DNA of 63,891 nt, the filler included, from Octopus bimaculoides (Eukaryota): the NCBI RefSeq assembly GCF_001194135.2. It is 5 parts of 5 records of this genome, joined end to end, with 100 filler letters (N's around TTAATTAATTAA, not from the genome) between each part and the next. Parts side by side here need not be neighbours in the genome. Positions count along the whole stretch, not along the records: positions 30,699 to 45,375 come from NC_069001.1; 4 more parts are not named here. One strand, written 5' to 3'. Positions 30,699-63,891 of the stretch are shown here, in pieces. The notes below the pieces were generated by a model. It was not told the origin of the DNA, did no database searches, and worked only from the letters and a program-made list of their open reading frames with translations. The translations under genes and the position numbers were made by a program. Positions within the stretch are counted from its first letter, which is position 1, and each line of letters begins with the position of its first letter.

Positions 30699-30731
30699 TG
30701 CGCCTATGAATTTTTTTTTTTTTTATTTTTT

Positions 30732-31190
30732 AAAAGGGTCTCTTCGGCAATAGAAGCGGCAAGAAATATTCGTTGTGTACTGAAATAAAGCATTTAAGTG
30801 TCCTGACATACCAATGATGATTTGGCCAGTTTCACTCAGTAATTTTTTTTTTTTTTTTTTTCTACGGGTTCTTCTCGATCTGGACGACAAAGTTCTTTCA
30901 ATATTGAAGACTGTAGTTGAGGAAAATGCAGAGCGAGCTGCACGAGAATTAGAACTGTTGAATTTCAAGTCACACTTCGATCATGAAATAACTTCACGAA
31001 CGAGGAAAAGTGGCTAAATTTGGTCAGTGGGTCTTTTATCATCTGAAAGCTTCTCGGTTTCATTAAAGTGTTGCCCTTTGCTCGTCCTTAAAGAGTAGAC
31101 TTTCTACTTTTCTTCATAAAGTAATGAAAAGCGTGTTCTCTATAATTATATCCAACGAAAACGAGACAGTGTTTAGCGTCCAATGAAAAA
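30732..31190 (+). mobile_element. Degraded mariner transposase relic
   Basis: Frameshifted segments: KGSSAIEAARNIRCVY, SRSGRQSSFN, LKTVVEENAERAAREL, GKVAKFGQWV, then FLHK..EK..LYNYIQRKR.CLASNEK. These are collinear with the mariner HTH-linker-catalytic start. Confidence 0.72.
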
Positions 31191-32204
31191 GATCAAGTCA
31201 CTTGCTATGCAAGTACATCTCCGTAGTATATTATTTATATATATATTAATGACTTATAGGCACACGGTATTTCGTTATACAACTATAATATGCTACAAAC
31301 TATATTAAACGTTTCTTTTTATAATACTGTGTGCTACTGTGTTAGCAGTGCATTTAAATCACGTGTTAGTCATCTATACAGATTTCCTACAGATACATCT
31401 CTACATGCTGGCGAAGGAGCAAAACTCCTGAAGGATGGCATATACACCCATTACACACTTTTTTCATCCTTTTATATATTTTTTTTTTTGCTGAAGGCGA
31501 AATTAGATGCTATTTTTTATAAGTTTAGCAACCACTTAGGGGTACTCTTGTTGGGTTGATGTTTCATGAGATAGAGCAGGAGGTCAGTTAGTAAGGGTGA
31601 ATCGAGTAAGAGACTCGGACCAGGTTTCAATCCCTGTCCAACGCAAGTTACCGTAATTTATGCTATTTATTTCTTTGAAACCTGCATGAATNNNNNNNNN
31701 NNNNNNNNNNNNNNNNNNNNNNNNNNNNNNNNNNNNNNNNNNNNNNNNNNNNNNNNNNNNNNNNNNNNNNNNNNNNNNNNNNNNNNNNNNNNNNNNNNNN
31801 NNNNNNNNNNNNNNNNNNNNNNNNNNNNNNNNNNNNNNNNNNNNNNNNNNNNNNNNNNNNNNNNNNNNNNNNNNNNNNNNNNNNNNNNNNNNNNNNNNNN
31901 NNNNNNNNNNNNNNNNNNNNNNNNNNNNNNNNNNNNNNNNNNNNNNNNNNNNNNNNNNNNNNNNNNNNNNNNNNNNNNNNNNNNNNNNNNNNNNGCTTCT
32001 GATGCTGCTGCTGCTAGTGTTGTTATTGTTGTTGCAAATGAACCGTATTACCAATGCTCCCTTCAAAATTCCTACCCCCACCCTACAACCTGTCCGTTCT
32101 CAACCACCCACCCACCCCGCTATTCTTTCAGGACTCCTCCTTGTCTCCACGCCTCCACTTCCGCCTATATGTATGCACATTGGATAGAAAACCCCGCATT
32201 AACT

Positions 32205-32537
32205 TCCTATGTAGTCATCATCATCATTGTCAACATCATCGTCATCGTCATCATCATCATCGTCATCGACGTCGTCGTCGTCGTCGTTGTGGTCGTCATT
32301 GCCACCACCATCGTCATCTTCATCAGCAGCAGTAGCATCACCAATACCATCACCACCGCCTCCACCATCATCATCATCATCGTCGTCGTCATTATCAGCA
32401 GTACCGCCACCACCACCACCATCACCACCATCATCGTCATCATCAACCCCCCTCCCCACATCTTATTCGTACGTATCCCTCCCCCATGAGATGTTTCGCT
32501 AATCTTTCTTCTCAAGTAACTTTACCACGATATTAAA

Positions 32538-32574
<37 letters not shown>

Positions 32575-32983
32575 AAAATACTGTTTTAAATCCCCTTGTC
32601 ACCATCGCCCCCCGCCCATGCACCCCTCACAATCCCATTAGTTTCACTCCTACCTCCTACCACCACCACCACCACCACCACCATATAAACACCTATATAA
32701 CATTTTCAAAAATCTTTAAAAAACAACTTTAAAACAATCACGCACAACAACTACGATCACCATCATCATCATCATCATCATCACCATCATCATCACAATC
32801 ATCATCATCATCACCATCATCAACATCACCATCACCATCGTCATCAATATCACCATCAATATCACCATCACCATCATCATCATCATCATCACCATCATCA
32901 TCACCATCATCATCACCATCATCATCATCATCATCACCATCATCATCACCATCATCATCACCATCATCATCACCATCATCATC

Positions 32984-33041
<58 letters not shown>

Positions 33042-33090
33042 CCATCATCATCACCATCATCATCATCACCATCATCATCATCATCGTTGT
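32205..33090. repeat. (CAT)n/(CAC)n/(CGT)n and (ATT)n trinucleotide tracts
   Basis: Direct; source of the poly-Met/His/Asp ORFs. Confidence 0.95.
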
Positions 33091-33279
33091 TGTTTTAATT
33101 ATAATTTTTTGTTTTTGTTTTTGTTTTTTAACATACTATAATTGTATGTTTTATTTTTATTTTTTTATTTTATTTTTTGTTTGTTTCTTTCTAAACTTTC
33201 GACGTCATTTATCCACATTCCAGAGAAACTCAAACTGTTCAGTCACACATGAAATATCTCATCGATTTCATCTACACAC

Positions 33280-33305
33280 ACACACATATATACACACACA
33301 CACAA

Positions 33306-33343
<38 letters not shown>

Positions 33344-33450
33344 ATATATATATACACACACACACACAANNNNNNNNNNCACACAAATATATATATACAC
33401 ACACACACACACATATATACACACACACACATATATACACACACACACAA

Positions 33451-33494
<44 letters not shown>

Positions 33495-33550
33495 ATATAT
33501 ATATACACACACACACACAAATATATATATACACACACATACACACACAA

Positions 33551-33583
<33 letters not shown>

Positions 33584-33764
33584 TATATACACACACACAA
33601 ATATATATACACACACACACACATATATGCACACGCACATATACACACACACAAATATATATATATATATACACACACACACACGCACATATATACACAC
33701 ACACACATACACACACACACACATATACACACACATACAAATATACACATTTTATAATAAAAGT

Positions 33765-33808
<44 letters not shown>

Positions 33809-33865
33809 GTATATATATATATGTATATACATATATATATATATATATATACACATGTATATATA
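33280..33865. repeat. Alternating (CA)n-(TA)n compound repeat with a recurring acacacacaaatatatatat unit
   Basis: Direct. Confidence 0.93.
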
Positions 33866-34810
33866 NNNNNNNNNNNNNNNNNNNNNNNNNNNNNNNNNNN
33901 NNNNNNNNNNNNNNNNNNNNNNNNNNNNNNNNNNNNNNNNNNNNNNNNNNNNNNNNNNNNNNNNNNNNNNNNNNNNNNNNNNNNNNNNNNNNNNNNNNNN
34001 NNNNNNNNNNNNNNNNNNNNNNNNNNNNNNNNNNNNNNNNNNNNNNNNNNNNNNNNNNNNNNNNNNNNNNNNNNNNNNNNNNNNNNNNNNNNNNNNNNNN
34101 NNNNNNNNNNNNNNNNNNNNNNNNNNNNNNNNNNNNNNCATCATTCAGTTTCCTTTCCTTCCTTCTTCCCTTTTTTTCTTTTCCTCGTTTCTGTCCATTT
34201 TTTTAGTCTTGATTAGTTTCAAATTTGAGGAAGAAAGAAAGAGGCGGAGGAGGAGGAGGAGGAGGAGGATGTTGTTGATGCTGGTGGTGGTGGTGGTGGT
34301 GGTGGTGATGATGATGAGCAGCAAAAACATGAACGACAAAGTAAAGGTTTGTGGTAGTGGTGGGAGGGATGTTTAATGTTTCTGTCGTGGTAGGAGTTGG
34401 GGAGAAGTTTACGTTCATGGAGGAAGAAAATACAGAGATAAGGGAAGCTAATTGGGGATTTTTGCGGCAAGATTGTGTGTGCATACGTGTATGTGTGTGC
34501 ATCTCTTATATATATGTGTGTGTGTGTGTTTGTGTATGCGCATACATACAGATAGATAGGTACATACGTACATAGACAGAGACAGGTAGATAGTTAAGCA
34601 GACACAGATAGACAGAAAGATGGATAGAATCATTGACTGAGAGACAGGTAGTTCGGGAAACGGACACACACACAGACTGCTTTAATGGAGGAACAAATAT
34701 GCAGATAAGGGAAACTAATTGGAGTATTCTATGGTAACATTGTGTGTATATACGTGTACATGTCTCTTTCTCTCCCTCTCTCTGTATATATGCATATGTA
34801 TGTAAATATA

Positions 34811-34841
<31 letters not shown>

Positions 34842-34974
34842 TGATACAGACATAGAAGCAGACACTCTTTTTCATTTTCTTTTCCTCTCCTCTTTTTCTT
34901 CCTCTTTCTTCGTCTTCTTTCTCAAAGTTGAAACTGTAATCAAGAAAAGGAAGGAAGGAGAGGAAATAGATAGG

Positions 34975-35005
<31 letters not shown>

Positions 35006-35018
35006 GTAGATAGATATA

Positions 35019-35231
35019 TTTCTTTATTGCCCCAGAGGGCTAAACACAGAGGGGACTAACAAGGACAAAGGGATTAAGTCGATTGCATCGACTCCAGTGC
35101 GTAACTGGTACTTACTTAATTGACCTCGAAAGGATGAAAGGCAGAGTCGACCTCGGCGGAATTTGAACTCAGAACGTAAAGACAGACGAAATACCGTTAA
35201 GCATTCCGCCCGGCGTGCTAACGATTCTGCC
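35019..35231 (-). mobile_element. Near full-length Nin/Deu-domain tRNA SINE
   Basis: Reverse complement: ggcagaatcgttagcacgccggg (A box) ... gagttcaaattcc (B box) ... gtcgactctgcctttcatcctttcgaggtcaattaagtaagtaccagt (Deu/Nin-like core). Confidence 0.85.
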
Positions 35232-35244
35232 ATATATATATATT

Positions 35245-35400
35245 CTTCTTTTCAGTTTCTGTCTACCAAATCCACTTACAAGGCTTTTTGGTCGGCCCGA
35301 GGCTATAGTAGAAAACACATTCCCAAGGTGCCACGCAGCAGGACTGAACCTGGAACCATATGGTTGGGAAACTTTCTTACCACACAGCCACGCACCCCTG
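35245..35400 (-). mobile_element. SINE family B 5' half
   Basis: ttcttttcagtttctgtctaccaaatccacttacaaggc...ggactgaacctggaaccatatgg...cacacagccacgc. Confidence 0.9.
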
Positions 35401-35412
35401 CAGATATTACAA

Positions 35413-35545
35413 AACAGGCACTCCGTCAGTTATGACAATGAGGGTTCCAGCTGATCCGATCCACGGAACAGCCTGCTTGGGAAACTAATGTACAAGTGGC
35501 TAAGCATTTCGCAATCATGCATACCCTTAATGTATTTCAGGCATG
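35413..35545 (-). mobile_element. SINE family A 3' fragment
   Basis: ggcactccgtcagttatgacaatgagggttccagctgatccgatccacggaacagcctgc is the reverse complement of the end of 2273-2662. Confidence 0.82.
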
Positions 35546-35936
35546 GATCTTGTACGTTGCTTTGTAAAACTCGTCCCCGCATATTGTTTACCAGGAGCTG
35601 TTTCACAACGAAAACCAATCGTGTTTATGAAAATACATCCGGAAACTCATAAATATCCGTCGAGTATATATTAAAAGATGAGTAAATAGGAGAGATTGGA
35701 TTGAGCAAACATGTTTTATTGCATAAACACTATAATTGTTTTCTTAACTTTACCGGCAGATAATTGCCGATATATTATTATGTAATATATAATAAATACA
35801 TTAAATTTATTACATTGCGTCTGTATTATTTCAACAACATTAGCAGATAAAGACTCCTCAAGTATGAACGCAAAATGTTTGCTAAAACAAATCATCAGTT
35901 ACGATATATGTCTGTGCTTTTAGCACCGCACTTCTA

Positions 35937-36366
35937 CGAAGGTCGGCTAAAGGCTGGTCAAGATTCCCACATGGAGTGTAACTAAATGAGGTTTATTTTT
36001 CAACAAAGGCCCTCCTGCGGTCCACACACTTCTTCCATTGGTGTTGCCGTGCTTGGGTCCTATTAAAGAAGCTTTCATCTTGTTGATGAAGCCGGAGCAA
36101 CCGTGTCAGCATGAATGTCGGGGCTAAATCCTTTTTCTGTAGGAGGTACTTGATAACACCACGATGCCAAATTTTGTCCATTCTTTTAAAGATATGCCTC
36201 CAATAATTATATTTGAAATCTTCTTTGAACGGTCAGATATCAGTTTACCTGTAAAGAAACAATGCAGTGATTAAGAAGACGGGTTGAAAGCAATGCATGC
36301 AAGATTTCACAGGTCTAACGTTACTCTTTCAGAGACGGCCTATGAACTTTTCAGCCTACCTTCTTG
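35937..36366 (-). mobile_element. Internally deleted non-autonomous mariner
   Basis: Imperfect TIRs TA-CGAAGGTCGGCTAAA and (reverse complement) TA-CAAGAAGGTAGGCTGAAAAG. The ORF joins the mariner N-terminus MDKIWHRGVIKYL to the C-terminus WKKCVDRR..VEK*. Confidence 0.85.
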
Positions 36367-36506
36367 TATGAGAGGACCTTTGAAGGCGAATACTGCAGTA
36401 GTGCACCATTCTATTATTACATCCACGCTTAGTAAAATTTGAAAGATTGCTGTATATGGAATGTATTAGTTTGACGCTCGGTAAAGGTGGAAAAGAGAGA
36501 GAGGGT

Positions 36507-36540
36507 TTTTAACGTTTCGGACATATCTCTTCATCAGAAA
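36507..36540 (-). ncRNA. Possible minimal hammerhead motif (PLE type), degenerate
   Basis: Minus strand: TTT-CTGATGA-AGAGATATGTCC-GAAAC-GTT-AAAA. Intact CUGAUGA and GAAA cores, palindromic AACGTT, weak stems I and II. Confidence 0.4.
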
Positions 36541-36580
36541 GGAAAGCGGAAAAGTCCAGAGAAGGAAAAAATATCACCAA

Positions 36581-36710
36581 CTGGAGCACAGCTTTTTGGG
36601 GTTTAAGTCAAACAGATCAACACTTGCTCAAACTGTCACGCAGTGGGACTGAACCCGCAACAATATGGTTGGGAATCAAGCTTCTTACAACACAACCATG
36701 CTTGTAGCTA
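36581..36710 (-). mobile_element. Internally deleted SINE family B
   Basis: The 3' piece ctggagcacagc..ttaagtcaaacagatc is joined directly to the head piece acttgctcaa..cacgcagtgggactgaacccg..atggttggg. Confidence 0.7.
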
Positions 36711-36969
36711 TATAAAAAAGGAAAATATAACGAAACATTTTCGAAATCGTTAAAAGACGGCCGTGTGGTATGTTTGTGGGAAATATTTTATTGATGATTA
36801 TAAATTGATGTTCTGCATAATAATTTCAAGGGTGTGGTTATTAGTGGTCTGGCTATTAATTAATAAAATATAAAATTACCTAATATTAATTTTAACTATT
36901 AGTTTAATGCATTTATCGTTCTAATTTATGTTGTTTTATGTAATTGTGAGAAGCAAGAAATGTTTAGAT

Positions 36970-37130
36970 ATGATGGTTGGTGTGGCTCTGGGATAAGGCG
37001 TTCGCTTCCCAACCACATGGTTCCGGGTTCAGACTCATTGCGTGGAACCTTGGTCAAGGCCGACCAAAGTCTTGTAAGGGGATTTGGTAGATAGAAACTG
37101 AAAAAAAGCCTGTGATGTGTGTGTGTGTTT
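36970..37130 (+). mobile_element. SINE family B 5' half with a small deletion
   Basis: tcgcttcccaaccacatggttccgggttcag..tgcgtggaaccttgg|caaggccgaccaaagtcttgtaagggatttggtagatagaaactgaaa. Confidence 0.85.
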
Positions 37131-37169
37131 GTATATATCTGTATGTCTTTGTGCTTGTGTTTCTTTATT

Positions 37170-37573
37170 TATTTATACTCTTTACACTTTTACTCTTTTA
37201 CTTGTTTCAGTCTTGTGACTGCGGCCATGCTGGAGCATCGCCTTTAGTCGAGCAAATCGACCCCAGGACTTATTCTTTAGAAGCCTAGTACCTATTCTAT
37301 CGGCCTCTTTTGCAGAACCGCTAAGTTACGGGGACATAAACACGGCAGCATCGGTTGTGAAGCGATGTTGGGGGCACAAACACAGAAACACAAACACATA
37401 CATATATATATACATATATACGACGGGCTTCTTTCAGTTTCCGTCTACCAAATCCAATCACAAGGCTTTGGTCGGCCTGAGGCTATAGTAGAAGAGACTT
37501 GCCCAAGATGCCACGCAGTGGGCCTGAACACAGGACCATGTGGTTGGTAAGCAAGCTACTTACCACACAGCCA
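37170..37573 (-). mobile_element. Essentially full-length SINE family B
   Basis: tRNA head, ttgggcaagtctcttct CORE-like motif, central TA/CA microsatellite, 3' half with (TTTAC)-like tail. Confidence 0.93.
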
Positions 37574-37673
37574 NNNNNNNNNNNNNNNNNNNNNNNNNNN
37601 NNNNNNNNNNNNNNNNNNNNNNNNNNNNNNNNNNNNNNNNNNNNNNNNNNNNNNNNNNNNNNNNNNNNNNNNN

Positions 37674-40600
37674 TACGTACGTACGAATGAATGTACGTAC
37701 GTACGAACGAACGTACGTACGTACGAACGATCGATCGTACGTATGAACAAATGATCGAAGGAAGGAAAGAACGTGCGTACGTAAGTTCGTACGTACGAAC
37801 GAATAAACGAAAGAAGGAACGTAATTACGAACGAACGAACGTATGTTCCTACGTACATATATATGAATGAACGAACGAACGAAGGTACGTACGTACGTAC
37901 GAACGAACGTATGTCAGAACGATCGAACGTACGGACGAACGAAAGAATGAACGAACGATCGAACAACGAATTAACGAACAAATGTAGGTACATACGTACG
38001 AACGATCGAACAAACGTATGTACGACGGTAGGAACGAACGAATGAACGAACAAACGAAAGAACGAACGAAAGTACGTACGTACGAACGAACGAGCGAAAG
38101 ATTGAAAGAACGAACGTACGTATGAAAAAAAAACGAACGAACAAAGAAACGGACAAACGTACGTACGAACGAAAGAACGAACGAACGTACGTAAGTTCGA
38201 AAAAAAAACGAACGAACGAAGAATTGAACGTACGTATGTACGAACGAACAAACGAACAAACGAAAGAATGAACGAACGATTGAACGAAAGAATGTACGTA
38301 CGAAAGAACGAACGAACAAACAAACGTACGTACGTACGTGCGAAGGAACGAACGAACGAACGAGCGAAAGAACGAACGAAGTAACGAAAGAATGGACGAA
38401 CGAACAAGGCAACGATCGAGCAAGCGTAAGAACCTACGTACGTACTTATGTACGAACAAACGAAGGAACTAACGAATGAACGTACGTACTTACGTACGTA
38501 AGAACGAACGAACGTACAAAAGAACTAACGTACGTCCGTACGTACGAACGAACGAAGTTAAGGAACGAACGAACAAACGAACGAAAGAACGATTGAACGT
38601 ATGTACGTACATACGTAAGAATGAACGTACGAACGAGCGTACGTGCGTACGAATGAATGAACGTACGTACGTTCGAACGATCGAAAGAAGGAAAGAACGA
38701 AGTAACGAATGAACGTACGTACTTACGAACGAACGAAAGAAAGAACGAACGTACGTACGTATGTACGTAAGTACGAACGAACGAAGGTACGTACGTACGT
38801 TCGTACGTAAGTACGAACAAACGATCGAACGAACGAAAGAAAGAACGAACGTAATTACGGACGTACGAACGAACGTACGTAGATACATATATAAGTACCT
38901 ACGTACGAACGAACGTAACAACGAAGGAACGAACAAACAACAGAACGAACGAACTAAAGAACGAATGTACGCACGTACGTAAGTAGGAACGAACGTACGC
39001 ACGTATGTACGTACGTACGAAACATGAAATAAGCGAATGAAAGAACGTAAGTATGTACGTAAGAACGAAGAAACGAAAGAATTAACGAACGAACGAAAGA
39101 AGGAAAGAAAGATCAAACAAACGTACGCACGTACGTACGGACGAACGAACGTACGTACGGACGAACGAACGTACGTACGTACAAAGGAATGAACGAAATA
39201 ACGTACGAAAGAACGCGCGAACGAACGAACAAACTAACAAACGTACGCCCGTACGTACGAACGAACGAACGTACGAACGATTGAACGAAAGAATGTACGT
39301 ACGTACGAAAGAACGAACGAACGAAAAAACGTACGTACGTGCGAAGGAAGGACCGAACGAACGACTGATCGTACGTACGGAAGAACGAAACAAACGAACG
39401 AACGAACAAAAGAACGAACGAAAGAATGGACGAACGAACGAACGATAGAGCGATCGAGCAAACGAAATAAACTACGTACGTACGTATGTACGAACAAACG
39501 AAGGAACGAATGAACAAACAAACATACGTACGTAGGAACGAACGCATGTGCGAACGAAAGAAAGATCGAACGAAAAAACAAACGAACGTACGTACATACC
39601 TCCGTACGTTAGAACGAGCGAATGAACGAAAGAACGATTGAACGCATGTACGTACATACGTAAGAATGAACGTACGAACGAGCGTACGTGCGTACGAATG
39701 AATGAACGTACGTTCTAACGATCGAAAGAAGGAAAGAACGAAGTAACGAATGAACGTACGTACTTAGGTAAGAACGAACGAACGAAAGAAAGAACTAAGG
39801 AAAGAAAGAAAGAACGAACGAACGTACGTACGTACGTATGTACGCAAGTACGAAGGTACGTACGTACGTACGTACGTAAGTACGAACGAACGATCGAACG
39901 AACGAACTTACGTTCGTACGTACATTCATTCTTTCGTTCGTTCGTTCGTACGTAGGTTCGTACGTACGTTCGTTAGTTCGTAGTTCGTTCATTCATTCAT
40001 ACATATATACATATGTAAATACGTACGTTCGATCGTTCGTTCGTTGGTTCTTTCGTTCGTTCATTTCGTTGGTATCTCGTACGTACGTACGAATGAGCGA
40101 ACGAACGATATGAACGAACTAACGAACGAACAAACGAACGAACGAACGTACGTATATTCGTACTTACATATGTATGAATGAACGATCGAACGAACGAGCG
40201 TGCGTATGTTCGAACGTACATACGTATAAATGAATGAACGTACGTACGTACGAACGAACGAGCGAAAGATTGAAAGAACGAACGTACGTATGAAAAAAAA
40301 CGAACGAACAAAGAAATGAACGTACGTATGTACGAACGAACAAACGAACGATAGAACGAACGTAGGTATCTATGTACTTGCGAACGACCGAGCAAACTTA
40401 CGTAAGTAGGTACATATGTACGTACGAACGAACAAACGAACAAAGTAACGAACGTACGCGCGTACGTACTTTCGGTCATTCTTACGCGCGTACGTTCTTT
40501 CGTTCATTCGTTCGTTTGTTCGTACGTACGTACGATCATTCGTTCGTACGTACGTTCGTTAGTTCGTACGTTCGTTCGTTCATTCATTCATACTTATATA

Positions 40601-43600
40601 CATATGTAAATACGTACCTTCGTTCGTATCTTTCGTTCGGTCATTTCGTTGATAAGCTCGTGCGAACGAACGATATGAACGAACTAACGAACGAACGAAC
40701 GAACGAACGAACGAACGAACGAACGAACGAACGTACGTACGTATATTCGTACTTTCATATGTATGAATGTACGAACGAGCGTGCGTATGTTCGTACGTAC
40801 ATATATATGAATGAACGAACGAACGAACGTACGTACGAATATACGAACTAACGAATGTACGTACGTACGTACGTACGAACGAACGTACGTACGACGAACG
40901 TACGTACGTACAAACGAACGAAACGTACGTATGAACAAATGATCGAAGGAAGGAAAGAACGTGCGTACGTAAGTAAGTTCGTACGTACGAAAGAAGGAAC
41001 GTAATTACGAACGAACGAATGTACGTATGTTCCTACGTACATATATATGAATGAACGAACGAACGTACGTACGGACGGACGAACAAACGAATGAAACGAA
41101 CGAACGAACGAATGAAACAAACGAATGAACGAACGTATGGCGTACGTACGAAAGAACGAAAGAACTCACGAATGAGGCAACGAACGTACGTCCGTACGTA
41201 TGTACGGATTTACGTACGTAAGTAAGTATGTAAGAACGAACAAACGATCGAATAAACGAATGAACAAAGAAACGGACGAACGAAAGAACGAACGAACGTA
41301 CGTAAGTTCGAAAAAAAAAACGAACGAACAAAGAATTGAACGTACGTATGTACGAACGAACAAACGAACAAACGAAAGAATGAACGAACGATTGAACGAA
41401 AGAATGTACGTACGAAAGAACGAACGAACGAACAAACGTACGTACGTGCGAAGGAACGAACGAACAAACGAACAAACGAAAGAATGAACGAACGATTGAA
41501 CGAAAGAATGTACGTACGAAAGAACGAACGAACAAACAAACGTACGGACGTACGTGCGAAGGAACGAACGAACGAACGAGCGAAAGAACGAACGAAGTAA
41601 CGAAAGAATGAACGAACGAACAAGACAACGATCGAGCAAGCGTAAGAACCTACGTACGTACTTATGTACGAACAAACGAAGGAACGAATGAACAATCAAA
41701 CGTACGTAGGAACGAACGCATTTGCGAACGAAAGAAAGATCGAAGGAGAAAACAAACGAACGTACGTACATACATCCGTACGTAGGAACGATCGAACGAG
41801 TGAACGAACGTACGAACGAAAGAGCTAACGTACGTCCGTACGTACGAACGAACGAAATTAAGGACCGAACGAAAAAACGAACGAAAAACGACTGAACGTA
41901 TGTACGTACATACGTAAGAATGAACGAGCGTACGTACGTACGAATGAATGTACGTACGAACGAACGAACGAAGGAAAGAAGGAAGTAACGAATGAACGTA
42001 CGTACTTACGTACGTAAGAACGAACGAACGAACGAAAGAACGAACAAACGTGCGTACGTACGTATGTACGTATGTACGTAAGTACGAACGAACGAAGCTA
42101 CGTACGAACGAACGAAGGTACGTACGAACGAACGATCGAATGAACGAAAGAAAGAACGTAAGAACGAACGAACGTAATTACGTAGTACGAACCAACGTAC
42201 GTAGGTACGTATATAATTACCTACGTACGAACGAACGTAAATACGTCCGTACGTACGTAACAACGAAGGAACGAACAAACAAATGAACGAACGAACTAAC
42301 GATCGAATGTACGCACGTATGTACGTAGGAACGAACGAACGATTGAACGAACGAACAAACAAGAGACCGAACGAAAGTACGTACGTACGAACGAACGACC
42401 GAGCGAAAGATTGAAAGAACATACGTACGTACGAAAAAAAGAACGAACGAACAAAGAAATGAACATACGTATGTACGTACGAACAAACGAACGGAAGAAC
42501 GATCGAAAGTACGAACGTTCGAAAGTAGGAACGATCGAACGTGGGTATGTATGTACGTACGAACGACCGAACGAACGTACGTAAGTAGGTACATATTTAC
42601 TTACGAACGAACGAGCAAACGAACAAAGTAACGAACGTTCGCGCGTATGTACGAACGTACGTACGTTCGGTCATTCTTACGCACGTACAGTCGTTTGTTC
42701 TTTCTTTCGTTCGTTCGTATTTAGTAACGTACGTACGTTCGTTCGTTGGATCGTTCGTACGTACTTACTTATGAACGTACGTACGTTCATTCGTTCTATA
42801 GTTTGTTCGTTCGTTCGTACGTACGTGCATTCGTTTGTCCTTTCGTTCGATCGTTAATTTGTTCGTTCGTTCGGTAGTTAGTTTCTTCATTCGTTCGCTG
42901 TTTTGTTCGTAGGTACGTACGTACGTACATTAATTCATTCGTACGTACGTACGTACCTACGTGCATATGTGCTTACGTACGTACGTGCGTTTGATCGTTC
43001 TTTCGTTTGTTCATTCGTTATTTCGTTCGTTCGTTCATTCATTCTTTCGTTCGTTCTTTCGTACGTACGTTCGTTCGTTCGCTCGTTTGTTCTTTCGTTC
43101 GTTCGTTCATTTTTCCATTCGTTCGTTCTGTCGATCGTTCGTTCGTTCATTTGTTTGTTTCGTTCGTTCGTTCGTTTGTTCCTTCGTTAGTTTCATACGT
43201 TCGATCGTTTGTTCCTTCGTTAGTTTCATACGTTCGATCGTACGTACGTTCGCTCTTTTGTTCGTTCGTTTGTTCTTTTGTTCGTTCATTTCGTTGGTAA
43301 GCTCGAACGTACGTACCTATGAGAGAACGAACGATATTAACGAACTAACGAACGAACAAAAGAAAGAACGAACGAACAAACGAAAGAATGAACTAACGAA
43401 CGTAAGTATATTCGTAATTACATATGTATGAATGAACGAGCGAACGAACGAGCGTGCGTATGTTCGTACGTACATATGTATGAATGAACGAACGAACGAA
43501 CGAAAGTACGTACGTACGAACGAAGGTACGTACGTACGAACGAAGGTACGTACGTACGAACGAACGATCGTACGTATGAACAAATGATCGAAGGAAGGAA

Positions 43601-45375
43601 AGAACGTGCGTACGTAAGTTCGTACGTACGAACGAATAAACGAAAGAAGGAACGTAATTACGAACGAACGAAAGAACGAACGGACGAAGGTACGTATGTT
43701 CCTACGTACATAAATTTGAACGAACGAACCAACCAACGAACGTACGTACGTACGAACGAACGTATGTCAGAACGAACGAACGTAAGGACGGACGAACGAA
43801 CGACCGAATGAAACGAACGAACGACCTAATGAACGAACGTATGTACATACGTACGAAAGAACTAACGAACGACGCAACGAACGAACGTCCGTACGTATGT
43901 ACGGATTTACGCGCGTAAGTACGTATGTAAGAACGAACGAACGATCAAACATACGAACGAACAAAGAAACGGACGAACGTACGTGCGAACGAAAGAACGA
44001 ACGAACGAACGATTGAACGAACGAACGTACGTAGGTACGAAAAAAAACGAACGAACAAAGAATTGAACGTACGTATGTACGAGCGAACGAACGAACAAAC
44101 GAACTACATAAGTAGGTACATATGTACATACGTACGTATAAACGAACGAACAAACTAACGAACGTACGCACGTACGTACAAACGATCGAACGAACGTACG
44201 TATGAACGAATGAACGAAAGAACGTACGAAAGAAAGAAAGAGCGAACGAACAAACTTACGAACGTACGCACGTACGAACGAACGTACGAAAGAATGAACG
44301 AACGATTGGACGAAAGAATGTACGTACGTACGTGCGAAGGAACGAACGAAGGAACGAACGAAAGAACTAACGAACGAAAGAACGAACGAACGACCGATCG
44401 AACGAAACAAACAAACGAATGAACGACTGAGCGAAGGAGCGAACGAACATACGAACGAACGAAATTAAGGAACGAATGAAATTAAGGAACGAACGAACAA
44501 ACGAACGAAAGAATGATTGAACGTATGTACGTACATACGTAAGAATGAACGTACGAACGAGCGTACGTACGTACGAATGAAAGAAAGTACGTACGTACGA
44601 ACGATCGAACGAACGAACGAAGGACAGAGCGAAGTAACGAATGAACGTAGGTACTTACGTACTTAAGAACGAACGAACGAACGAACGAAAGAACAAACGA
44701 ACATACGTACGTACGTATGTACGTAAGTACGAACGAACGAAGGTACGTACGTACGTACGTACGAACGACCGATCGAATGAAAGAAAGAACGTAAGAACGA
44801 GCGAAAGTAATTACGGACGTACGAACGAACGTACGTAGGTACGTATATAAGTACCTACGTACGAACGAACGTAAATACGTCCGTACGTACGTAACAATGA
44901 ACGAACGAACTAACGAACGAATGTACGCACGTACGTACGTAGGAACGAACGAACGAACGTACGCATGTATGTACGTACGTACGAAACATGAAAGAAACGA
45001 ATGAAAGAATGTAATTACGTACGTAAGAAAGAATTAACGAACAAATGAATGAACGAAAGAAGGAACGAACGATCGAACAAACGAATTAACGAACAAATGT
45101 AGATACATACGTACGAACGAACGAACAAATGAATGAACGAGCGAAAGAACGTATGTACGAAGGAACGAGCGAGCGAAAGATTGAAAGAACGAACGTACGT
45201 ACGTAAAAAAATACGAACGAACAAACGAACGAAAGAACGATCGAAAGAACGAACGATCGAACGAACGAACGTAGGCATGTATGTACGTACGAACGACCGA
45301 ACGAACGTACGTAAGTAGGTACATATGTACGTACGAACGAACGAACAAACGAACAAAGTAACGTACGTAAGTAGG
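37674..45375. repeat. Complex CpG-rich tetramer satellite (ACGA/ACGT and variants), array 1, with kb-scale higher-order repeats and internal inversions
   Basis: 4-nt phased mosaic. The marker atgaacaaatgatcgaaggaaggaaagaacgtgcgtacgtaag recurs at 37743, 40931 and 43576. Strand polarity flips at about 39910, 40075, 40470, 40650, 42665 and 43295. Confidence 0.95.
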
Positions 45376-61439: not shown

Positions 61440-63891
61440 ACGTACGTGCGTACGCACATCCGTTCGTTCGTTCGTACGTACGTGCGTTCGGTTGTCCTTT
61501 CGTTCCTTCGGTAATTTGTTCGTTCGTTAGTTTGTTCATTCGTTCGCTCTTTTGTCCGTAGGTACGTACGCACGTACATTAATTCATTCGTACGTACGTA
61601 TCTACTTACATATGTGCTTACGTACGTACGTGCGTTTGATCGTTCTTTCGTTTGTTCATTCGTTCTTCCGTTCGTACGTACGTTCGTTCCTTCTTCCGTT
61701 CGTTCGTTTGTTCCTTCGTAATTTTCATACGTTCGATCGTACGTACGTTCGTTCTTTCGATCGTTCGTTCGTTCGATCATTAGTTCGTTCGTTCGTACGT
61801 ACCTACTTACGTACGTTCGTTCGTTCGTTTATTCATTCATAGGTATATACATATGTAAATACGTACGTTCGTTGGTTTTTTCGTTCGTTCATTTCGTTGG
61901 TAAGCGAACGAACGATTTGAACGAACTAACGAACGAAAGAACGAACGTACGTATATTCGTACTTACATATGTATAAATGAACGAACGAACGAGCGTGCGT
62001 ATGTTCGTACGTACATATGTATGAATGAATGTACGTACGTACGAACAAACGTACGTACGTACGAAAGAACGATCGTACGTATGAACAAATGATCGAAGGA
62101 AGGAAAGAACGTGCGTACGTAAGTAAGTTCGTAAGTACGAACGAATAAACGAAAGAAGGAACGTAATTACGAACGTACGTATGTTCCTACAAACATATAT
62201 ATGAACGAACGTATGTCAGAACAAACGAACGTACAGACGGACGAACGACCTATTGAACGAACGTACGTACGTACGAAAGAACTAACGAACGAACGTCCGT
62301 ACGTATGTACGGATTTACGTACGTAAGTACGTATGTAAGAACGATCGAACACACGAACGAACAAAGAAACGGACGAACGTACGTACAAACGAACGATTGA
62401 ACAAACGAACGTACGTAGGTACGAAAAAAAAACGAACGAACACAGAATTGAACGTACGTATGTACGAACGAACGTACATAAATAGGTACAGATGTACGTA
62501 TGAACGAACGAACAAACTAACGAACGTACGTACGTACGCACGAAAGAACGTACGTACGAAAGAACGAACAAACTAACGAACGAACGATTGAACGAAAGAA
62601 TGTACGTACGTGCGAAGGAACGAAAGAAACAAACGAATGAACGAACGAAAGAAGGAACGAAGTAACGAAAGAATGGACGAACGAGCAAACGGAAGAACGT
62701 ACGTATGTACGAACAAACGAATGAACAAACAAACGTACGTAGGAACGAACGCATGTGCGAACGAAAAAACAAACGAACGTACGTACATACATCCGTACGT
62801 AGGAACGAACGAAGGTACGTACGTACGAACGAAAGATCGATTGAACGTATGTACGTACATACGTAAGAATGAAGGTACGAACGAGCGTACGTACGTACGA
62901 ATGAATGAACATACGTACGTACGAACGAAGTAACTAATGAACCTACGTAAGAACGAACGAACGTACATACGTCAGTACGAACGAACGTAATTACGTACGT
63001 ACGAAACATGAAAGAACGTAAGTACGTACGTAAGAACGATCGAACAAACGAATTAACGAACAAATGTAGGTACATACGTACGAACGAACGAACAAGCGTA
63101 CGTACAACGGAACAAACGAACGAACGTACGTACGTTCGGTCATTCTTACGCACGTACGTTCGTTCGTATTTAGTAACGTACGTGCGTTCGGTTGTCCTTT
63201 CGTTCGTTCGGTCGTTAGTTTGTTCATTCGTTCGCTCTTATGTCCGTAGGTACGTACGCACGTACATTAATTCATTCGTACGTACGTACATATGTGCTTA
63301 CGTACGTGCGTGCGTTTGATCGTTCTTTCGTTTGTTCATTCGTTTTTCGTTCGTTCGTTCATTCATTCTTTCGTTTGTTCGTACGTACGCTCGTTTGTTC
63401 TTTCGTTCATTCATTCTTTCGTTTGTTCGTACGTACGGTCGTTTGTTCTTTCGTTCGTTCGTTCATTCTTCCGTTCGGTCGGTCGTTCGTTCATTTGTTT
63501 CCTTCGTTAGTTTCGTACGTACGTTCGTACTTTTGTTCGTTCATTCGTTCGTACGTAAACGTACGTTCGTACGTACATTCATTCTTTCGTTCGTTCGTTC
63601 GTTTATTCATTCATACGCATATACATATGTAAATACGTACGTTCGATCGTTAGTTCGTTGGTTCTTTCGTTAGTTCATTTCGTTGGTAAGCTCGTACGTA
63701 CGTACGAATGAGCGAACGAACGAACGTACGTATATTCGTACTTACATATGTATGAATGAACGAACGAACGAGCGTGCGTATGTTCGTACGTATATATGTA
63801 TGAATGAACGAACGAACGAACGTACGTACGAACGAACGATCGTACGTATGAACAAATGATCGAAGGAAGGAAAGAACGTGCGTACGTAAGT
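61440..63891. repeat. ACGA/ACGT complex satellite, array 2 (runs off the window end)
   Basis: Same markers as array 1 (at 62081 and 63848) and the same inversion junctions (61889, 63134, 63675). Confidence 0.95.

What the first reader, a model, noticed from the sequence alone, without database searches (positions are those of the whole stretch)
37674..45375. CpG tetramer satellite whose higher-order unit contains fixed, inherited inversions
Seen: a 4-nt phased mosaic (ACGA, ACGT, ATGA, ACAA, AAGA and others) is organised into variable higher-order repeats. The marker recurs at 37743, 40931 and 43576 (spacing 3188 and 2645) and at 62081 and 63848 (spacing 1767). Strand polarity flips repeatedly at the same short junction words: forward-to-reverse TTCGGTCATTCTTACGC(A/G)CGTAC at about 40471, 42666 and 63135; reverse-to-forward TCATTTCGTTG(G/A)TA..C(T)CG at 40061, 40641, 43286, 61889 and 63675. 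Inference: an ancestral unit containing an inversion was amplified as a block (rolling-circle, BIR or breakage-fusion type), or these words are recurrent strand-switch sites. Most satellites are unidirectional, so this could be a centromeric or subtelomeric domain, or a fold-back amplifying element. I do not recognise it as a described family.
Basis: partly seen in the sequence, partly recalled or inferred. Interest (0 to 1): 0.78.

Follow-up and report, generated by a model that had tools for sequence, protein, structure and literature searches.

The report
Four-base satellite with inherited inverted blocks
This is a real, non-coding, essentially untranscribed satellite DNA array built from the four-base units CGAA and CGTA, whose roughly 2.6-kb higher-order repeat carries a short inverted block with conserved junctions also found in a sister species; it is an interesting but recognisable kind of satellite architecture, not a new class of element.

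Summary
Positions 37674-45375 are a 7.7-kb period-4 array, bounded by N gaps on both sides. CGAA makes up 31% of units and CGTA 20%, and CpG observed/expected is 3.4. A 45-mer marker recurs exactly at 37742, 40930 and 43575, giving higher-order units of 3188 and 2645 bp.

Three T-rich inverted blocks interrupt the array: 39913-40087, 40469-40661 and 42657-43311. They are bounded by a conserved forward-to-reverse word (A: 40471, 42666) and a conserved reverse-to-forward word (B: 40061, 40641, 43286).

Homology extends across both sides of A and B, so the junctions were copied as part of a block rather than made repeatedly. Short contigs from four runs of this species (three studies) support the junctions, with error-free crossings at about single-copy depth in up to two runs each. 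A sister species about 5% diverged carries A and B at single-copy depth, so the inversion predates that split.

The general satellite is abundant, about 1,000-3,000 marker copies. The junction words are few to tens of copies, so this is a local variant. RNA-seq shows almost no transcription. Conserved inversion sites in satellites are already described in Tribolium. No long reads were available, so the long-range order and the chromosomal location are untested.

The parts
37674..45375 (+). Whole satellite array (7702 bp, no internal N). The base unit is the 4-bp CGAA/CGTA mosaic, and it is bounded by N gaps at 37574-37673 and from 45376.
37674..40861 (+). Higher-order copy 1, cut by the gap at its start. 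It is 3188 bp from marker to marker and contains two inverted blocks, because a module of about 582 bp is locally duplicated (39909-40258 matches 40491-40839 at 81%).
40862..43506 (+). Higher-order copy 2 (2645 bp): about 2.0 kb forward plus one inverted block of 655 bp.
43507..45375 (+). Higher-order copy 3, truncated. The contig ends about 18 bp before the position where junction A is expected (45368 aligns to 42638 and 40456).
37742..37786 (+). 45-mer marker TATGAACAAATGATCGAAGGAAGGAAAGAACGTGCGTACGTAAGT, exact. It is also exact at 40930-40974 and 43575-43619. The marker region is about 1,000-3,000x single-copy depth in the genome.
39913..40087 (-). Inverted block R1 (175 bp). It is entered through the atypical junction A' at about 39912 and left through junction B1.
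   Evidence: Error-free short contigs cross A' at 39878-39938 in runs X7 and X8.
40469..40661 (-). Inverted block R2 (193 bp), homologous to R1. It lies between junction A (40471) and junction B2 (40641).
42657..43311 (-). Inverted block R3 (655 bp), between junction A (42666) and junction B3 (43286). It carries about 250 bp of extra generic GTTC-rich sequence compared with R1 and R2.
40471..40493 (+). Junction A word TTCGGTCATTCTTACGCGCGTAC (forward to reverse). The switch passes through a GTAC run and keeps the 4-nt register. A second copy is at 42666-42688.
43286..43305 (+). Junction B word TCATTTCGTTGGTAAGCTCG (reverse to forward). It contains non-tetramer filler and breaks the register. 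Other copies are at 40641-40660 and, one base shorter, at 40061-40079.
39983..40191 (.). Imperfect palindrome centred on junction B1 (about 40087). The arms are about 105 bp and 81% alike, and both carry the ACATATGTAT...GAATGAA motif.
   Evidence: It lies at about the top 1% of the null, before correcting for the 51 centres tried.

Best explanation
This is a non-coding satellite DNA array in an animal genome. It grew from a CpG-containing tetranucleotide repeat, a mosaic of CGAA units (which give polarity) and CGTA units (which are self-complementary). It is organised into a diverged higher-order repeat of about 2.65 kb.

In an ancestor of this array, a short stretch was laid down in the opposite orientation between two units. 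Most likely this was an inverted copy of the start of the unit. One end (junction A) switches strand cleanly and in register inside a self-complementary GTAC run. That is what microhomology-mediated template switching or recombination at a palindromic tract would produce. The other end (junction B) is untidy, with filler bases and a register shift.

The unit carrying this inverted block was then duplicated in tandem, by unequal exchange or segmental duplication. This included a second local duplication of about 582 bp and a secondary rearrangement that made junction A'. All copies therefore share the same junction words. The arrangement is old: it predates the split from a sister species about 5% diverged. 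It is a local variant of a much more abundant satellite family.

Shown: the array, its periodicities, the junction homology, support from reads of this species, presence in the sister species, and near-absence of transcripts. Inferred: the strand-switch mechanism, the order of events, and the lack of a sequence-specific function beyond being heterochromatin-type repeat DNA.
For: Array and units.

Higher-order periodicity: the exact 45-mer occurs three times. Co-linear blocks are 80-99% identical at offsets of about 2.65, 3.2 and 5.85 kb, against about 70% background.

Single origin of the junctions: exact 20-23-mers, with homology continuing on both sides.

Register: it is kept through GTAC runs at A', A1 and A2 and broken at B1-B3 (CpG phase runs).

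Not a local misassembly: single-copy depths are 48.8, 42.3, 10.7 and 57.2 for X7, X5, X12 and X8. Error-free short contigs at 54-73x cross junction A (42568-42678) in X5 and X7. Contigs at 53-63x cross junction B (43280-43368). Contigs at 47-100x cross A' (39878-39938) in X7 and X8. All four runs (three studies) show depth over the A and B3 bins.

Age: in run X15 (organism B) the flank ortholog has depth 29 and 31 substitutions in 601 bp. Its contigs cross junction A (42612-42688, depth 25.6, 6 differences) and junction B (43258-43347, depth 38, 8 differences).

Local variant of an abundant family: marker bins are about 1,000-3,000x single copy. Junction bins are 30-88x by contig depth. In raw reads they are only about 5-8x (A) and about 2x (B).

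Silent: 26 and 37 reads out of about 12-13 million in two RNA-seq runs.

No RNA family or tRNA hit. No prokaryotic or metagenomic match.
Against: No long reads could be obtained. The order and number of blocks over 7.7 kb rests on a gap-containing scaffold, which I infer to be a short-read assembly.

One 230-bp patch is 98.7% identical between copies 1 and 2. That could be gene conversion or an assembly or gap-filling artefact.

Mirror symmetry, which a fold-back or template-switch origin predicts, is not above the array's own background at A1, A2, B2 or B3. It is only weakly above it at B1 and A'. The mechanism is therefore inferred from register and microhomology, not demonstrated.

Junction copy numbers differ several-fold between the contig-depth estimate and the raw-read estimate.

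The raw-read runs look like Hi-C libraries, and most of their reads matched only partly.

Adjacency to the SINE-rich flank rests only on a 100-N scaffold gap.
Confidence: 0.72

Rival explanations
1. Recurrent strand switching: the junction words are hot spots where orientation flips arose independently several times.
For: The forward-to-reverse switches all occur in register at self-complementary GTAC runs, which are plausible template-switch sites. One junction (A', about 39912) uses a different sequence from A, so more than one event did happen in this array.
Against: A1/A2 and B1/B2/B3 share homology well beyond the words, on both sides. They occupy equivalent positions in co-linear higher-order copies. 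The words are made of non-canonical tetramers (GGTC ATTC TTAC GCRC; GGTAAGCT) that independent events would not recreate.
Confidence: 0.05
2. Assembly artefact: the inverted blocks, or the long-range order of the blocks, are chimeric joins made by a short-read assembler walking through a high-copy repeat.
For: The scaffold has N gaps on both sides of the array, and the contig ends 18 bp before an expected junction A. The family is present in thousands of copies. There is a 98.7% patch between two copies. No long reads were available.
Against: Error-free short contigs at single-copy depth cross A, B3 and A' in one or two of the four runs examined, and all four runs (three studies, 2015, 2022 and 2025) show depth over the A and B3 bins. 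Contigs from a sister species cross A and B. The higher-order copies are only 74-87% alike, so most words are locus-specific and can be assembled.
Confidence: 0.08
3. Foldback-type transposon or other mobile-element cargo: the forward and reverse tandem-repeat blocks are the inverted termini of a foldback element (like FB, Tetris or Rehavkus) that has multiplied.
For: Foldback elements carry tandem repeats in long inverted termini and can seed satellites (PMC12581902). Junction segments fold into long hairpins: -42 kcal/mol with z -7 at A1, and -31 with z -5.6 at B3. The junction words are multi-copy.
Against: The arms are very unequal (about 2.0 kb against 0.18-0.65 kb), and their mirror similarity is not above the background of the array. 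There is no non-repeat middle domain and no genuine ORF. The only long ORF is a by-product of the 12-nt periodicity. The modules are in tandem inside one array rather than dispersed. Hairpin potential follows trivially from any orientation switch.
Confidence: 0.07
4. Functional dyad architecture: the conserved inversion sites are maintained because hairpin or cruciform-forming switches help organise (peri)centromeric chromatin, as proposed for Tribolium.
For: The junctions are conserved between copies and in a sister species at about the flank's divergence. They have strong hairpin potential. The same idea was proposed for conserved inversion sites in Tribolium satellites (PMC13081366).
Against: The junction words are low-copy compared with the family, so they are not a general feature of the satellite. 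Junction divergence in the sister species (about 8%) is no lower than flank divergence (about 5%), so there is no sign of constraint. The arms are asymmetric. The chromosomal location is unknown.
Confidence: 0.08

Closest known systems
Tribolium major and minor satellites with 'macro-dyad symmetries' and conserved inversion sites (T. madens TmSat1/TmSat2; T. freemani TfSat01): PMC13081366, PMC12581902
   Same: Both are tandem satellite arrays made of inversely oriented subarrays. The sequences at the points where orientation changes are conserved among copies and differ from the canonical repeat. Both have predicted hairpin potential at the switches (compared).
   Different: In Tribolium the monomers are about 110-700 bp, the arms are multi-kilobase and roughly symmetric, and inversion-site variants number in the thousands at about 98% identity. 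Here the base unit is 4 bp, and the arms are very unequal (about 2 kb against 0.2-0.65 kb). The junction words are few to tens of copies and 84-85% alike. The array sits in a different phylum, if my recollection that the flank SINE is from an octopus is right. The location is unknown.
Complex satellites whose monomer contains inverted subunits (T. brevicornis 1061-bp satellite; T. madens MAD2; T. audax TAUD2), as summarised in PMC12581902
   Same: An inversion is part of the amplified repeat unit itself and is inherited by every copy.
   Different: Those units are homogenised, genome-wide major satellites with near-equal inverted halves. Here the inverted block is a minor fraction of a diverged 2.65-kb unit and is specific to a local variant.
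Inversions and strand switches inside human centromeric and pericentromeric satellite arrays in complete assemblies (established knowledge; related papers are listed but I did not read them)
   Same: Otherwise head-to-tail arrays contain blocks of opposite polarity that long reads confirm as real.
   Different: Those are mostly large, single events within megabase arrays of 171-bp or 5-bp-derived units, not a junction repeated with the higher-order period.
Simple-sequence satellites derived from microsatellites, such as the tetranucleotide satellites of decapod crustaceans (from memory, not checked here)
   Same: A very short base unit is expanded to kilobases or megabases, with variant units fixed into longer-period patterns.
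   Different: Here one of the two main units (CGTA) is self-complementary and the array keeps a very high CpG content (observed/expected 3.4).

Membership tests
Satellite DNA with higher-order repeat (HOR) organisation | Long head-to-tail tandem array of a short base unit | tested here: met
   Period 4 over 7.7 kb. Self-match at lag 4 is 70.6%. 705 CpG spacings are exactly 4.
Satellite DNA with higher-order repeat (HOR) organisation | Copies one HOR period apart are more alike than neighbouring stretches in general | tested here: met
   Blocks are 80-99% identical at offsets of about 2.65, 3.2 and 5.85 kb, against about 70% background. The offset histogram peaks there. The copies are diverged, about 74-87% overall.
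Satellite DNA with higher-order repeat (HOR) organisation | High genomic copy number | tested here: met
   Typical 130-bp bins are about 1,000-5,000x single-copy depth at 95% identity or more in four runs. Marker bins are about 1,000-3,000x. A megabase-scale total is only a rough inference.
Satellite DNA with higher-order repeat (HOR) organisation | Heterochromatic, centromeric or subtelomeric location | not testable with these tools
   The array is bounded by N gaps. There is no cytology or chromatin data.
Tribolium-type macro-dyad satellite architecture | Arrays composed of inversely oriented subarrays | tested here: met
   Seven alternating polarity segments.
Tribolium-type macro-dyad satellite architecture | Conserved, distinct sequence at the inversion sites | tested here: met
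   Junction words A and B are exact or nearly exact among copies and are present in a sister species. Copy number is only few to tens.
Tribolium-type macro-dyad satellite architecture | Direct and inverted arms of multi-kilobase, roughly matching length (dyad symmetry) | tested here: not met
   Forward runs are 1.9-2.2 kb, plus one short 381-bp run. Reverse blocks are 175, 193 and 655 bp. Mirror similarity is not above background.
Foldback transposon (FB, Tetris, Rehavkus type) | Two long inverted termini that match each other | tested here: not met
   Anchored mirror alignments at A1, A2, B2 and B3 fall within the null. Only B1 (top 1%) and A' (top 1% at 60 nt) are weakly high, before correcting for the 51 centres tried.
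Foldback transposon (FB, Tetris, Rehavkus type) | Dispersed copies with target-site duplications; a middle domain or transposase | tested here: inconclusive
   No genuine ORF and no non-repeat domain in the array. Dispersal and target-site duplications cannot be examined, because both ends are N gaps.
Functional centromeric repeat | Occupied by centromeric histone / site of kinetochore assembly | not testable with these tools
   No chromatin data are available.

The most novel reading that the evidence does not exclude
The dyad-type satellite organisation with conserved inversion sites would extend beyond Tribolium to a distant animal lineage. A 2026 paper states that it is documented only in Tribolium (PMC13081366). 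Here it would be built on a partly self-complementary CpG tetramer, with the conserved switches maintained because they form hairpins or cruciforms that shape (peri)centromeric chromatin.
Probability: 0.08. Interest if true: 0.7.

Novelty: new member of a known kind. Interest (0 to 1): 0.36.

Why it matters
Satellites remain poorly described outside a few model groups. My searches found no paper describing a satellite family for cephalopods, which is what I believe the host to be.

This array shows three things worth knowing:
- A tetranucleotide repeat can mature into a kilobase-scale higher-order unit.
- An orientation switch can become a heritable part of that unit.
- Such an array can stay stable at one locus across a species split, instead of being rapidly homogenised.

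It is also a practical warning for assembly. The contig breaks just where a junction is expected, and the CpG density makes the array a large potential methylation target.

If the inverted module turned out to be a general feature of centromeric regions, it would bear on the idea that DNA dyad structure, rather than sequence, marks centromeres. The low copy number of the junction words argues against that.

Tried and rejected
1. Coding potential. The 283-aa ORF on the minus strand (37556-38407) and similar frames are by-products of the 12-nt periodicity. CGAA and CGTA units contain no stop codon in several frames. Rejected.

2. Structured RNA or tRNA-derived origin. There are no Rfam or ARAGORN hits anywhere in the piece.

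3. Transcription or small-RNA source. Two RNA-seq runs of about 12-13 million reads each gave 26 and 37 partial hits, despite thousands of genomic copies. Small-RNA libraries were not available.

4. Fold-back origin tested by mirror symmetry. I aligned each junction's left arm to the reverse complement of its right arm, and compared the scores with random pairs of forward windows. The result was not above background except weakly at B1 and A'. The blastn palindromes at centres 40087 and 39915.5 are therefore only suggestive.

5. CpG decay signature. C-to-A variants (AGAA, 6.4%) are as common as the deamination products TGAA (5.4%) and CAAA (4.3%), so there is no clean methylation-decay pattern.

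6. Long-read confirmation. Searches for PacBio and Nanopore runs returned nothing.

7. Raw Illumina runs X20-22. These look like Hi-C libraries (GATC-GATC loose ends). More than 95% of the laid reads matched only partly, so they gave only rough junction depths.

8. Contaminant or symbiont. The marker is absent from 185,579 prokaryotic species genomes, and junction A is absent from metagenome contigs. The family is present at high depth in every individual of the species examined.

9. Naming the organism. Run labels are coded. A literature search for a flank SINE 20-mer found nothing. My belief that the flank repeat is the abundant octopus SINE rests on memory only.

10. Intermediate periodicity. 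There is only a faint bump at lags 40-44 and no sign of nucleosome-length periodicity.
Full report
**What is there**

The piece is 30699-45375. It is a scaffold from an animal genome with several N gaps: 31692-31994, 33370-33379, 33866-34138, 37574-37673 and from 45376. The finding occupies the last contig, 37674-45375. This is 7702 bp without internal N and is flanked by gaps on both sides.

It is a period-4 array.
- Self-match is 70.6% at lag 4, against 14-24% at lags that are not multiples of 4.
- Tandem Repeats Finder reports period-4 arrays at 37675-42581, 42691-43287 (consensus TCGT, the other polarity) and 43325-45354.
- There are 1164 CpGs, observed/expected 3.4, and 705 of the CpG-to-CpG spacings are exactly 4.
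- With every segment turned to the A-rich orientation, the in-register units are CGAA 31%, CGTA 20%, AGAA 6.4%, TGAA 5.4% and CAAA 4.3%.
- CGTA is self-complementary. Only CGAA/TTCG gives the array a polarity.

**Higher-order structure**

A 45-mer marker is exact at 37742, 40930 and 43575, spacing 3188 and 2645 bp.

A strict self-comparison gives co-linear blocks of 80-99% identity, against a background of about 70% between arbitrary in-register stretches. Aligned length per available kilobase peaks at offsets of 2600-2800, 3200-3400 and 5800-6000.

There is also sub-structure. A duplication of about 1045 bp lies inside copy 1 (38579-38837 matches 39624-39906). A repeat of about 104 bp lies at 41352-41579. 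A duplication of about 582 bp (39909-40258 matches 40491-40839, 81%) explains why copy 1 is about 540 bp longer than copy 2.

**Polarity**

AT skew divides the array as follows.

| Segment | Orientation | Length |
|---|---|---|
| 37674-39912 | forward | 2239 bp |
| 39913-40087 | reverse (R1) | 175 bp |
| 40088-40468 | forward | 381 bp |
| 40469-40661 | reverse (R2) | 193 bp |
| 40662-42656 | forward | 1995 bp |
| 42657-43311 | reverse (R3) | 655 bp |
| 43312-45375 | forward | 2064 bp |

The forward-to-reverse word TTCGGTCATTCTTACGCRCGTAC (junction A) is exact at 40471 and 42666. The reverse-to-forward word TCATTTCGTTGRTAAGCTCG (junction B) is exact at 40641 and 43286, and one base shorter at 40061.

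It has a different sequence. There, mid-unit sequence (39624-39906, homologous to 41879-42148) abuts R1, so it looks like a later rearrangement.

The short forward segment 40088-40468 is a unit reduced to its start plus its end.

**Were the junctions inherited or made repeatedly?**

The two copies of junction A align at 84% over 162 columns, with clear homology on both the forward and the reverse side. They differ by a 12-nt (three-unit) indel. The three copies of junction B align at 85%, again on both sides.

The junction words are built from non-canonical tetramers and sit at equivalent positions in co-linear units. That pattern means one origin followed by block duplication, not independent switches.

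**Is it real DNA or an assembly product?**

No PacBio or Nanopore runs could be found. I therefore used Logan contigs from four runs of the same species, from three studies dated 2015, 2022 and 2025.

Single-copy depth in the unique flank is 48.8, 42.3, 10.7 and 57.2 for runs X7, X5, X12 and X8. Error-free contigs cross the junctions at about single-copy depth:

| Junction | Span of contig | Runs | Depth |
|---|---|---|---|
| A | 42568-42678 | X5, X7 | 54-73 |
| B3 | 43280-43368 | X5, X7 | 53-63 |
| A' | 39878-39938 | X7, X8 | 47-100 |

The local joins are therefore genuine. They are seen at single-copy depth in runs X5, X7 and X8, which come from two studies, and run X12 of the 2015 study also shows depth over the A and B3 bins. 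The higher-order copies are only 74-87% alike, which explains why short reads could assemble the locus.

What remains unverified is the long-range order over 7.7 kb. One 230-bp patch is 98.7% identical between copies 1 and 2 (38240-38469 against 41456-41685). This is either gene conversion or a gap-filling artefact.

The contig stops at 45375, about 18 bp before the point where junction A is expected by homology.

**Abundance**

At 95% identity or more, typical 130-bp bins of the array collect about 1,000-5,000 times single-copy depth. Pure (CGAA)n stretches collect tens of thousands. The marker bins collect about 1,000-3,000 times.

The junction bins are much lower. At 97% identity, contig depth gives 47-88x for A and 30-77x for B3. 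Sampled raw reads give about 5-8x and about 2x. B2 gives 0-7x.

So the satellite family is a major repeat, which I infer only roughly to be megabase-scale. The inversion-bearing unit is a local variant with few to tens of copies.

The two 2025 runs show about 2.5 times more satellite per genome than the 2015 and 2022 runs. I did not resolve this.

**Age**

Three other species labels (organisms B, C and D) share the unique flank at about 5% divergence. In run X15 (organism B) a 654-nt contig of depth 29 differs by 31 substitutions over 601 bp. Run X17 (organism C) shows 15 differences in 290 bp at depth 9.2.

Organism B has a contig crossing junction A (42612-42688, depth 25.6, 6 differences) and another crossing junction B (43258-43347, depth 38, 8 differences). 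Both are at its single-copy depth. The simplest reading is that these are the orthologous locus, so the inverted arrangement predates that species split.

Organisms C and D have contigs for the marker and for the interior of R3. A sixth organism (F) matches only the generic (CGAA)n parts.

**Mechanism**

Written in the GNNC register, all three forward-to-reverse junctions pass from GAAC through GTAC to GTTC without losing register:
- A': GAAC GAAC TTAC GTTC GTAC
- A1: GTAC GTAC TTTC GGTC ATTC
- A2: GTAC GTAC GTTC GGTC ATTC

Junction B contains filler (GGTA[A]GCT) and register shifts (phase runs). A clean, in-register switch inside a self-complementary tract, paired with an untidy second junction, is what microhomology-mediated template switching or illegitimate recombination at palindromic GTAC runs would leave. 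This step is inference.

A fold-back origin predicts mirror symmetry around the junctions. I tested this against random pairs of forward windows. Only B1 (100-nt arms, top 1.1%) and A' (60-nt arms, top 1%) stand out, and that is before allowing for the 51 centres tried. A1, A2, B2 and B3 are unremarkable.

B1 is nevertheless the centre of a palindrome of 2 x 105 bp at 81%. It shares the distinctive ACATATGTAT...GAATGAA motif at matching distances on both arms. I therefore lean towards R having started as an inverted duplicate of the start of the unit, later blurred by indels. R3 carries about 250 bp of extra generic sequence.

Junction segments fold into long DNA hairpins: -42 kcal/mol (z -7) at A1 and -31 kcal/mol (z -5.6) at B3. 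Forward control segments give only -11 to -13 kcal/mol. This follows from any orientation switch and is not evidence of function.

**Other readings tested**

- Coding: the long ORFs across the array are by-products of the periodicity.
- RNA genes: no Rfam or tRNA hits.
- Transcription: two RNA-seq runs gave 26 and 37 partial reads out of about 12-13 million each, so the array is essentially silent in those libraries.
- Contamination: the marker is absent from prokaryotic genomes and junction A is absent from metagenome contigs.
- Foldback transposon: not supported. The arms are unequal and do not match each other, there is no middle domain, and the modules are in tandem. Dispersal and target-site duplications could not be examined.

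**Comparison with what is known**

The closest described architecture is in flour beetles. Tribolium madens, T. freemani and T. castaneum satellites form arrays of inversely oriented subarrays with highly conserved inversion-site sequences ('macro-dyad symmetries'). The authors state that these had been documented only in that genus (PMC13081366; PMC12581902). Older Tribolium satellites also have inverted subunits inside the monomer.

The present array shares the inverted subarrays and the conserved, distinct junction sequences. It fails the symmetry criterion (about 2 kb against 0.2-0.65 kb). Its junctions are few rather than thousands, and they show no stronger conservation than the neutral flank. 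I therefore do not file it as a macro-dyad satellite. It is a new member of the broad kind 'satellite with a higher-order unit that contains an inversion'.

I found no paper describing this family or any cephalopod satellite. The organism's name was hidden. My guess that it is an octopus rests on recognising the flank SINE from memory.

**Verdict**

The location and function claims are untested. Interest is moderate (0.36).

Noticed in passing
window 45358-45375 and the gap from 45376: The contig ends about 18 bp before the position where junction A is predicted by homology with 40456-40471 and 42638-42666. The assembler seems to have broken at the orientation switch.
   Followed up: partly
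window 38240-38469 vs 41456-41685: A 230-bp patch is 98.7% identical between higher-order copies that are otherwise 74-87% alike. It is either gene conversion or a gap-filling or collapse artefact.
   Followed up: no
window 35245-35385, 36592-36700, 36975-37110 (minus strand), 37425-37573: At least four copies of a SINE-like interspersed repeat lie in both orientations in the flank. ARAGORN and Rfam find no tRNA in them. From memory this resembles the abundant octopus SINE, but I did not verify that.
   Followed up: partly
window 35442-35483: This roughly 40-bp stretch has extreme depth in the sister-species runs, about 600,000-720,000 against a single-copy depth of 29. That is roughly 20,000 or more copies, so it is part of a very abundant interspersed element.
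   Followed up: no
window 35968-36270: Another dispersed repeat in the flank, about 50-500 times single-copy depth, with many partially matching contigs running off into unrelated sequence.
   Followed up: no
window 32200-33090, 33274-33865, 34966-35016: The region is dense in microsatellites. There are long (ATC)n/(ATCATC)n tracts (330 bp at 32756-33085), a compound (AC)n/(AT)n tract of about 600 bp, and (ATAG)n. Together they give strong negative GC skew at 32200-34200.
   Followed up: no
whole array, runs X7 and X5 against X12 and X8: Satellite depth relative to single-copy depth is about 2.5 times higher in the two 2025 runs than in the 2015 and 2022 runs. For example, the marker bin is about 3,200x against about 1,000x. 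This could be library bias or copy-number variation between individuals.
   Followed up: no
window 37556-38407 (minus strand): A 283-aa open reading frame (FVRSFVRTYVR...) runs through the satellite. It arises because 3 x 4 nt gives a 12-nt periodicity and the main units contain no stop codons. It is not a gene.
   Followed up: yes
runs X20-X22 laid on window 42560-43400: These 2026 'GENOMIC OTHER' Illumina runs show loose ends with CGATCGATGG-type ligation junctions, and more than 95% of the laid reads match only partly. This is consistent with Hi-C libraries cut at the GATC sites that the satellite itself contains.
   Followed up: partly
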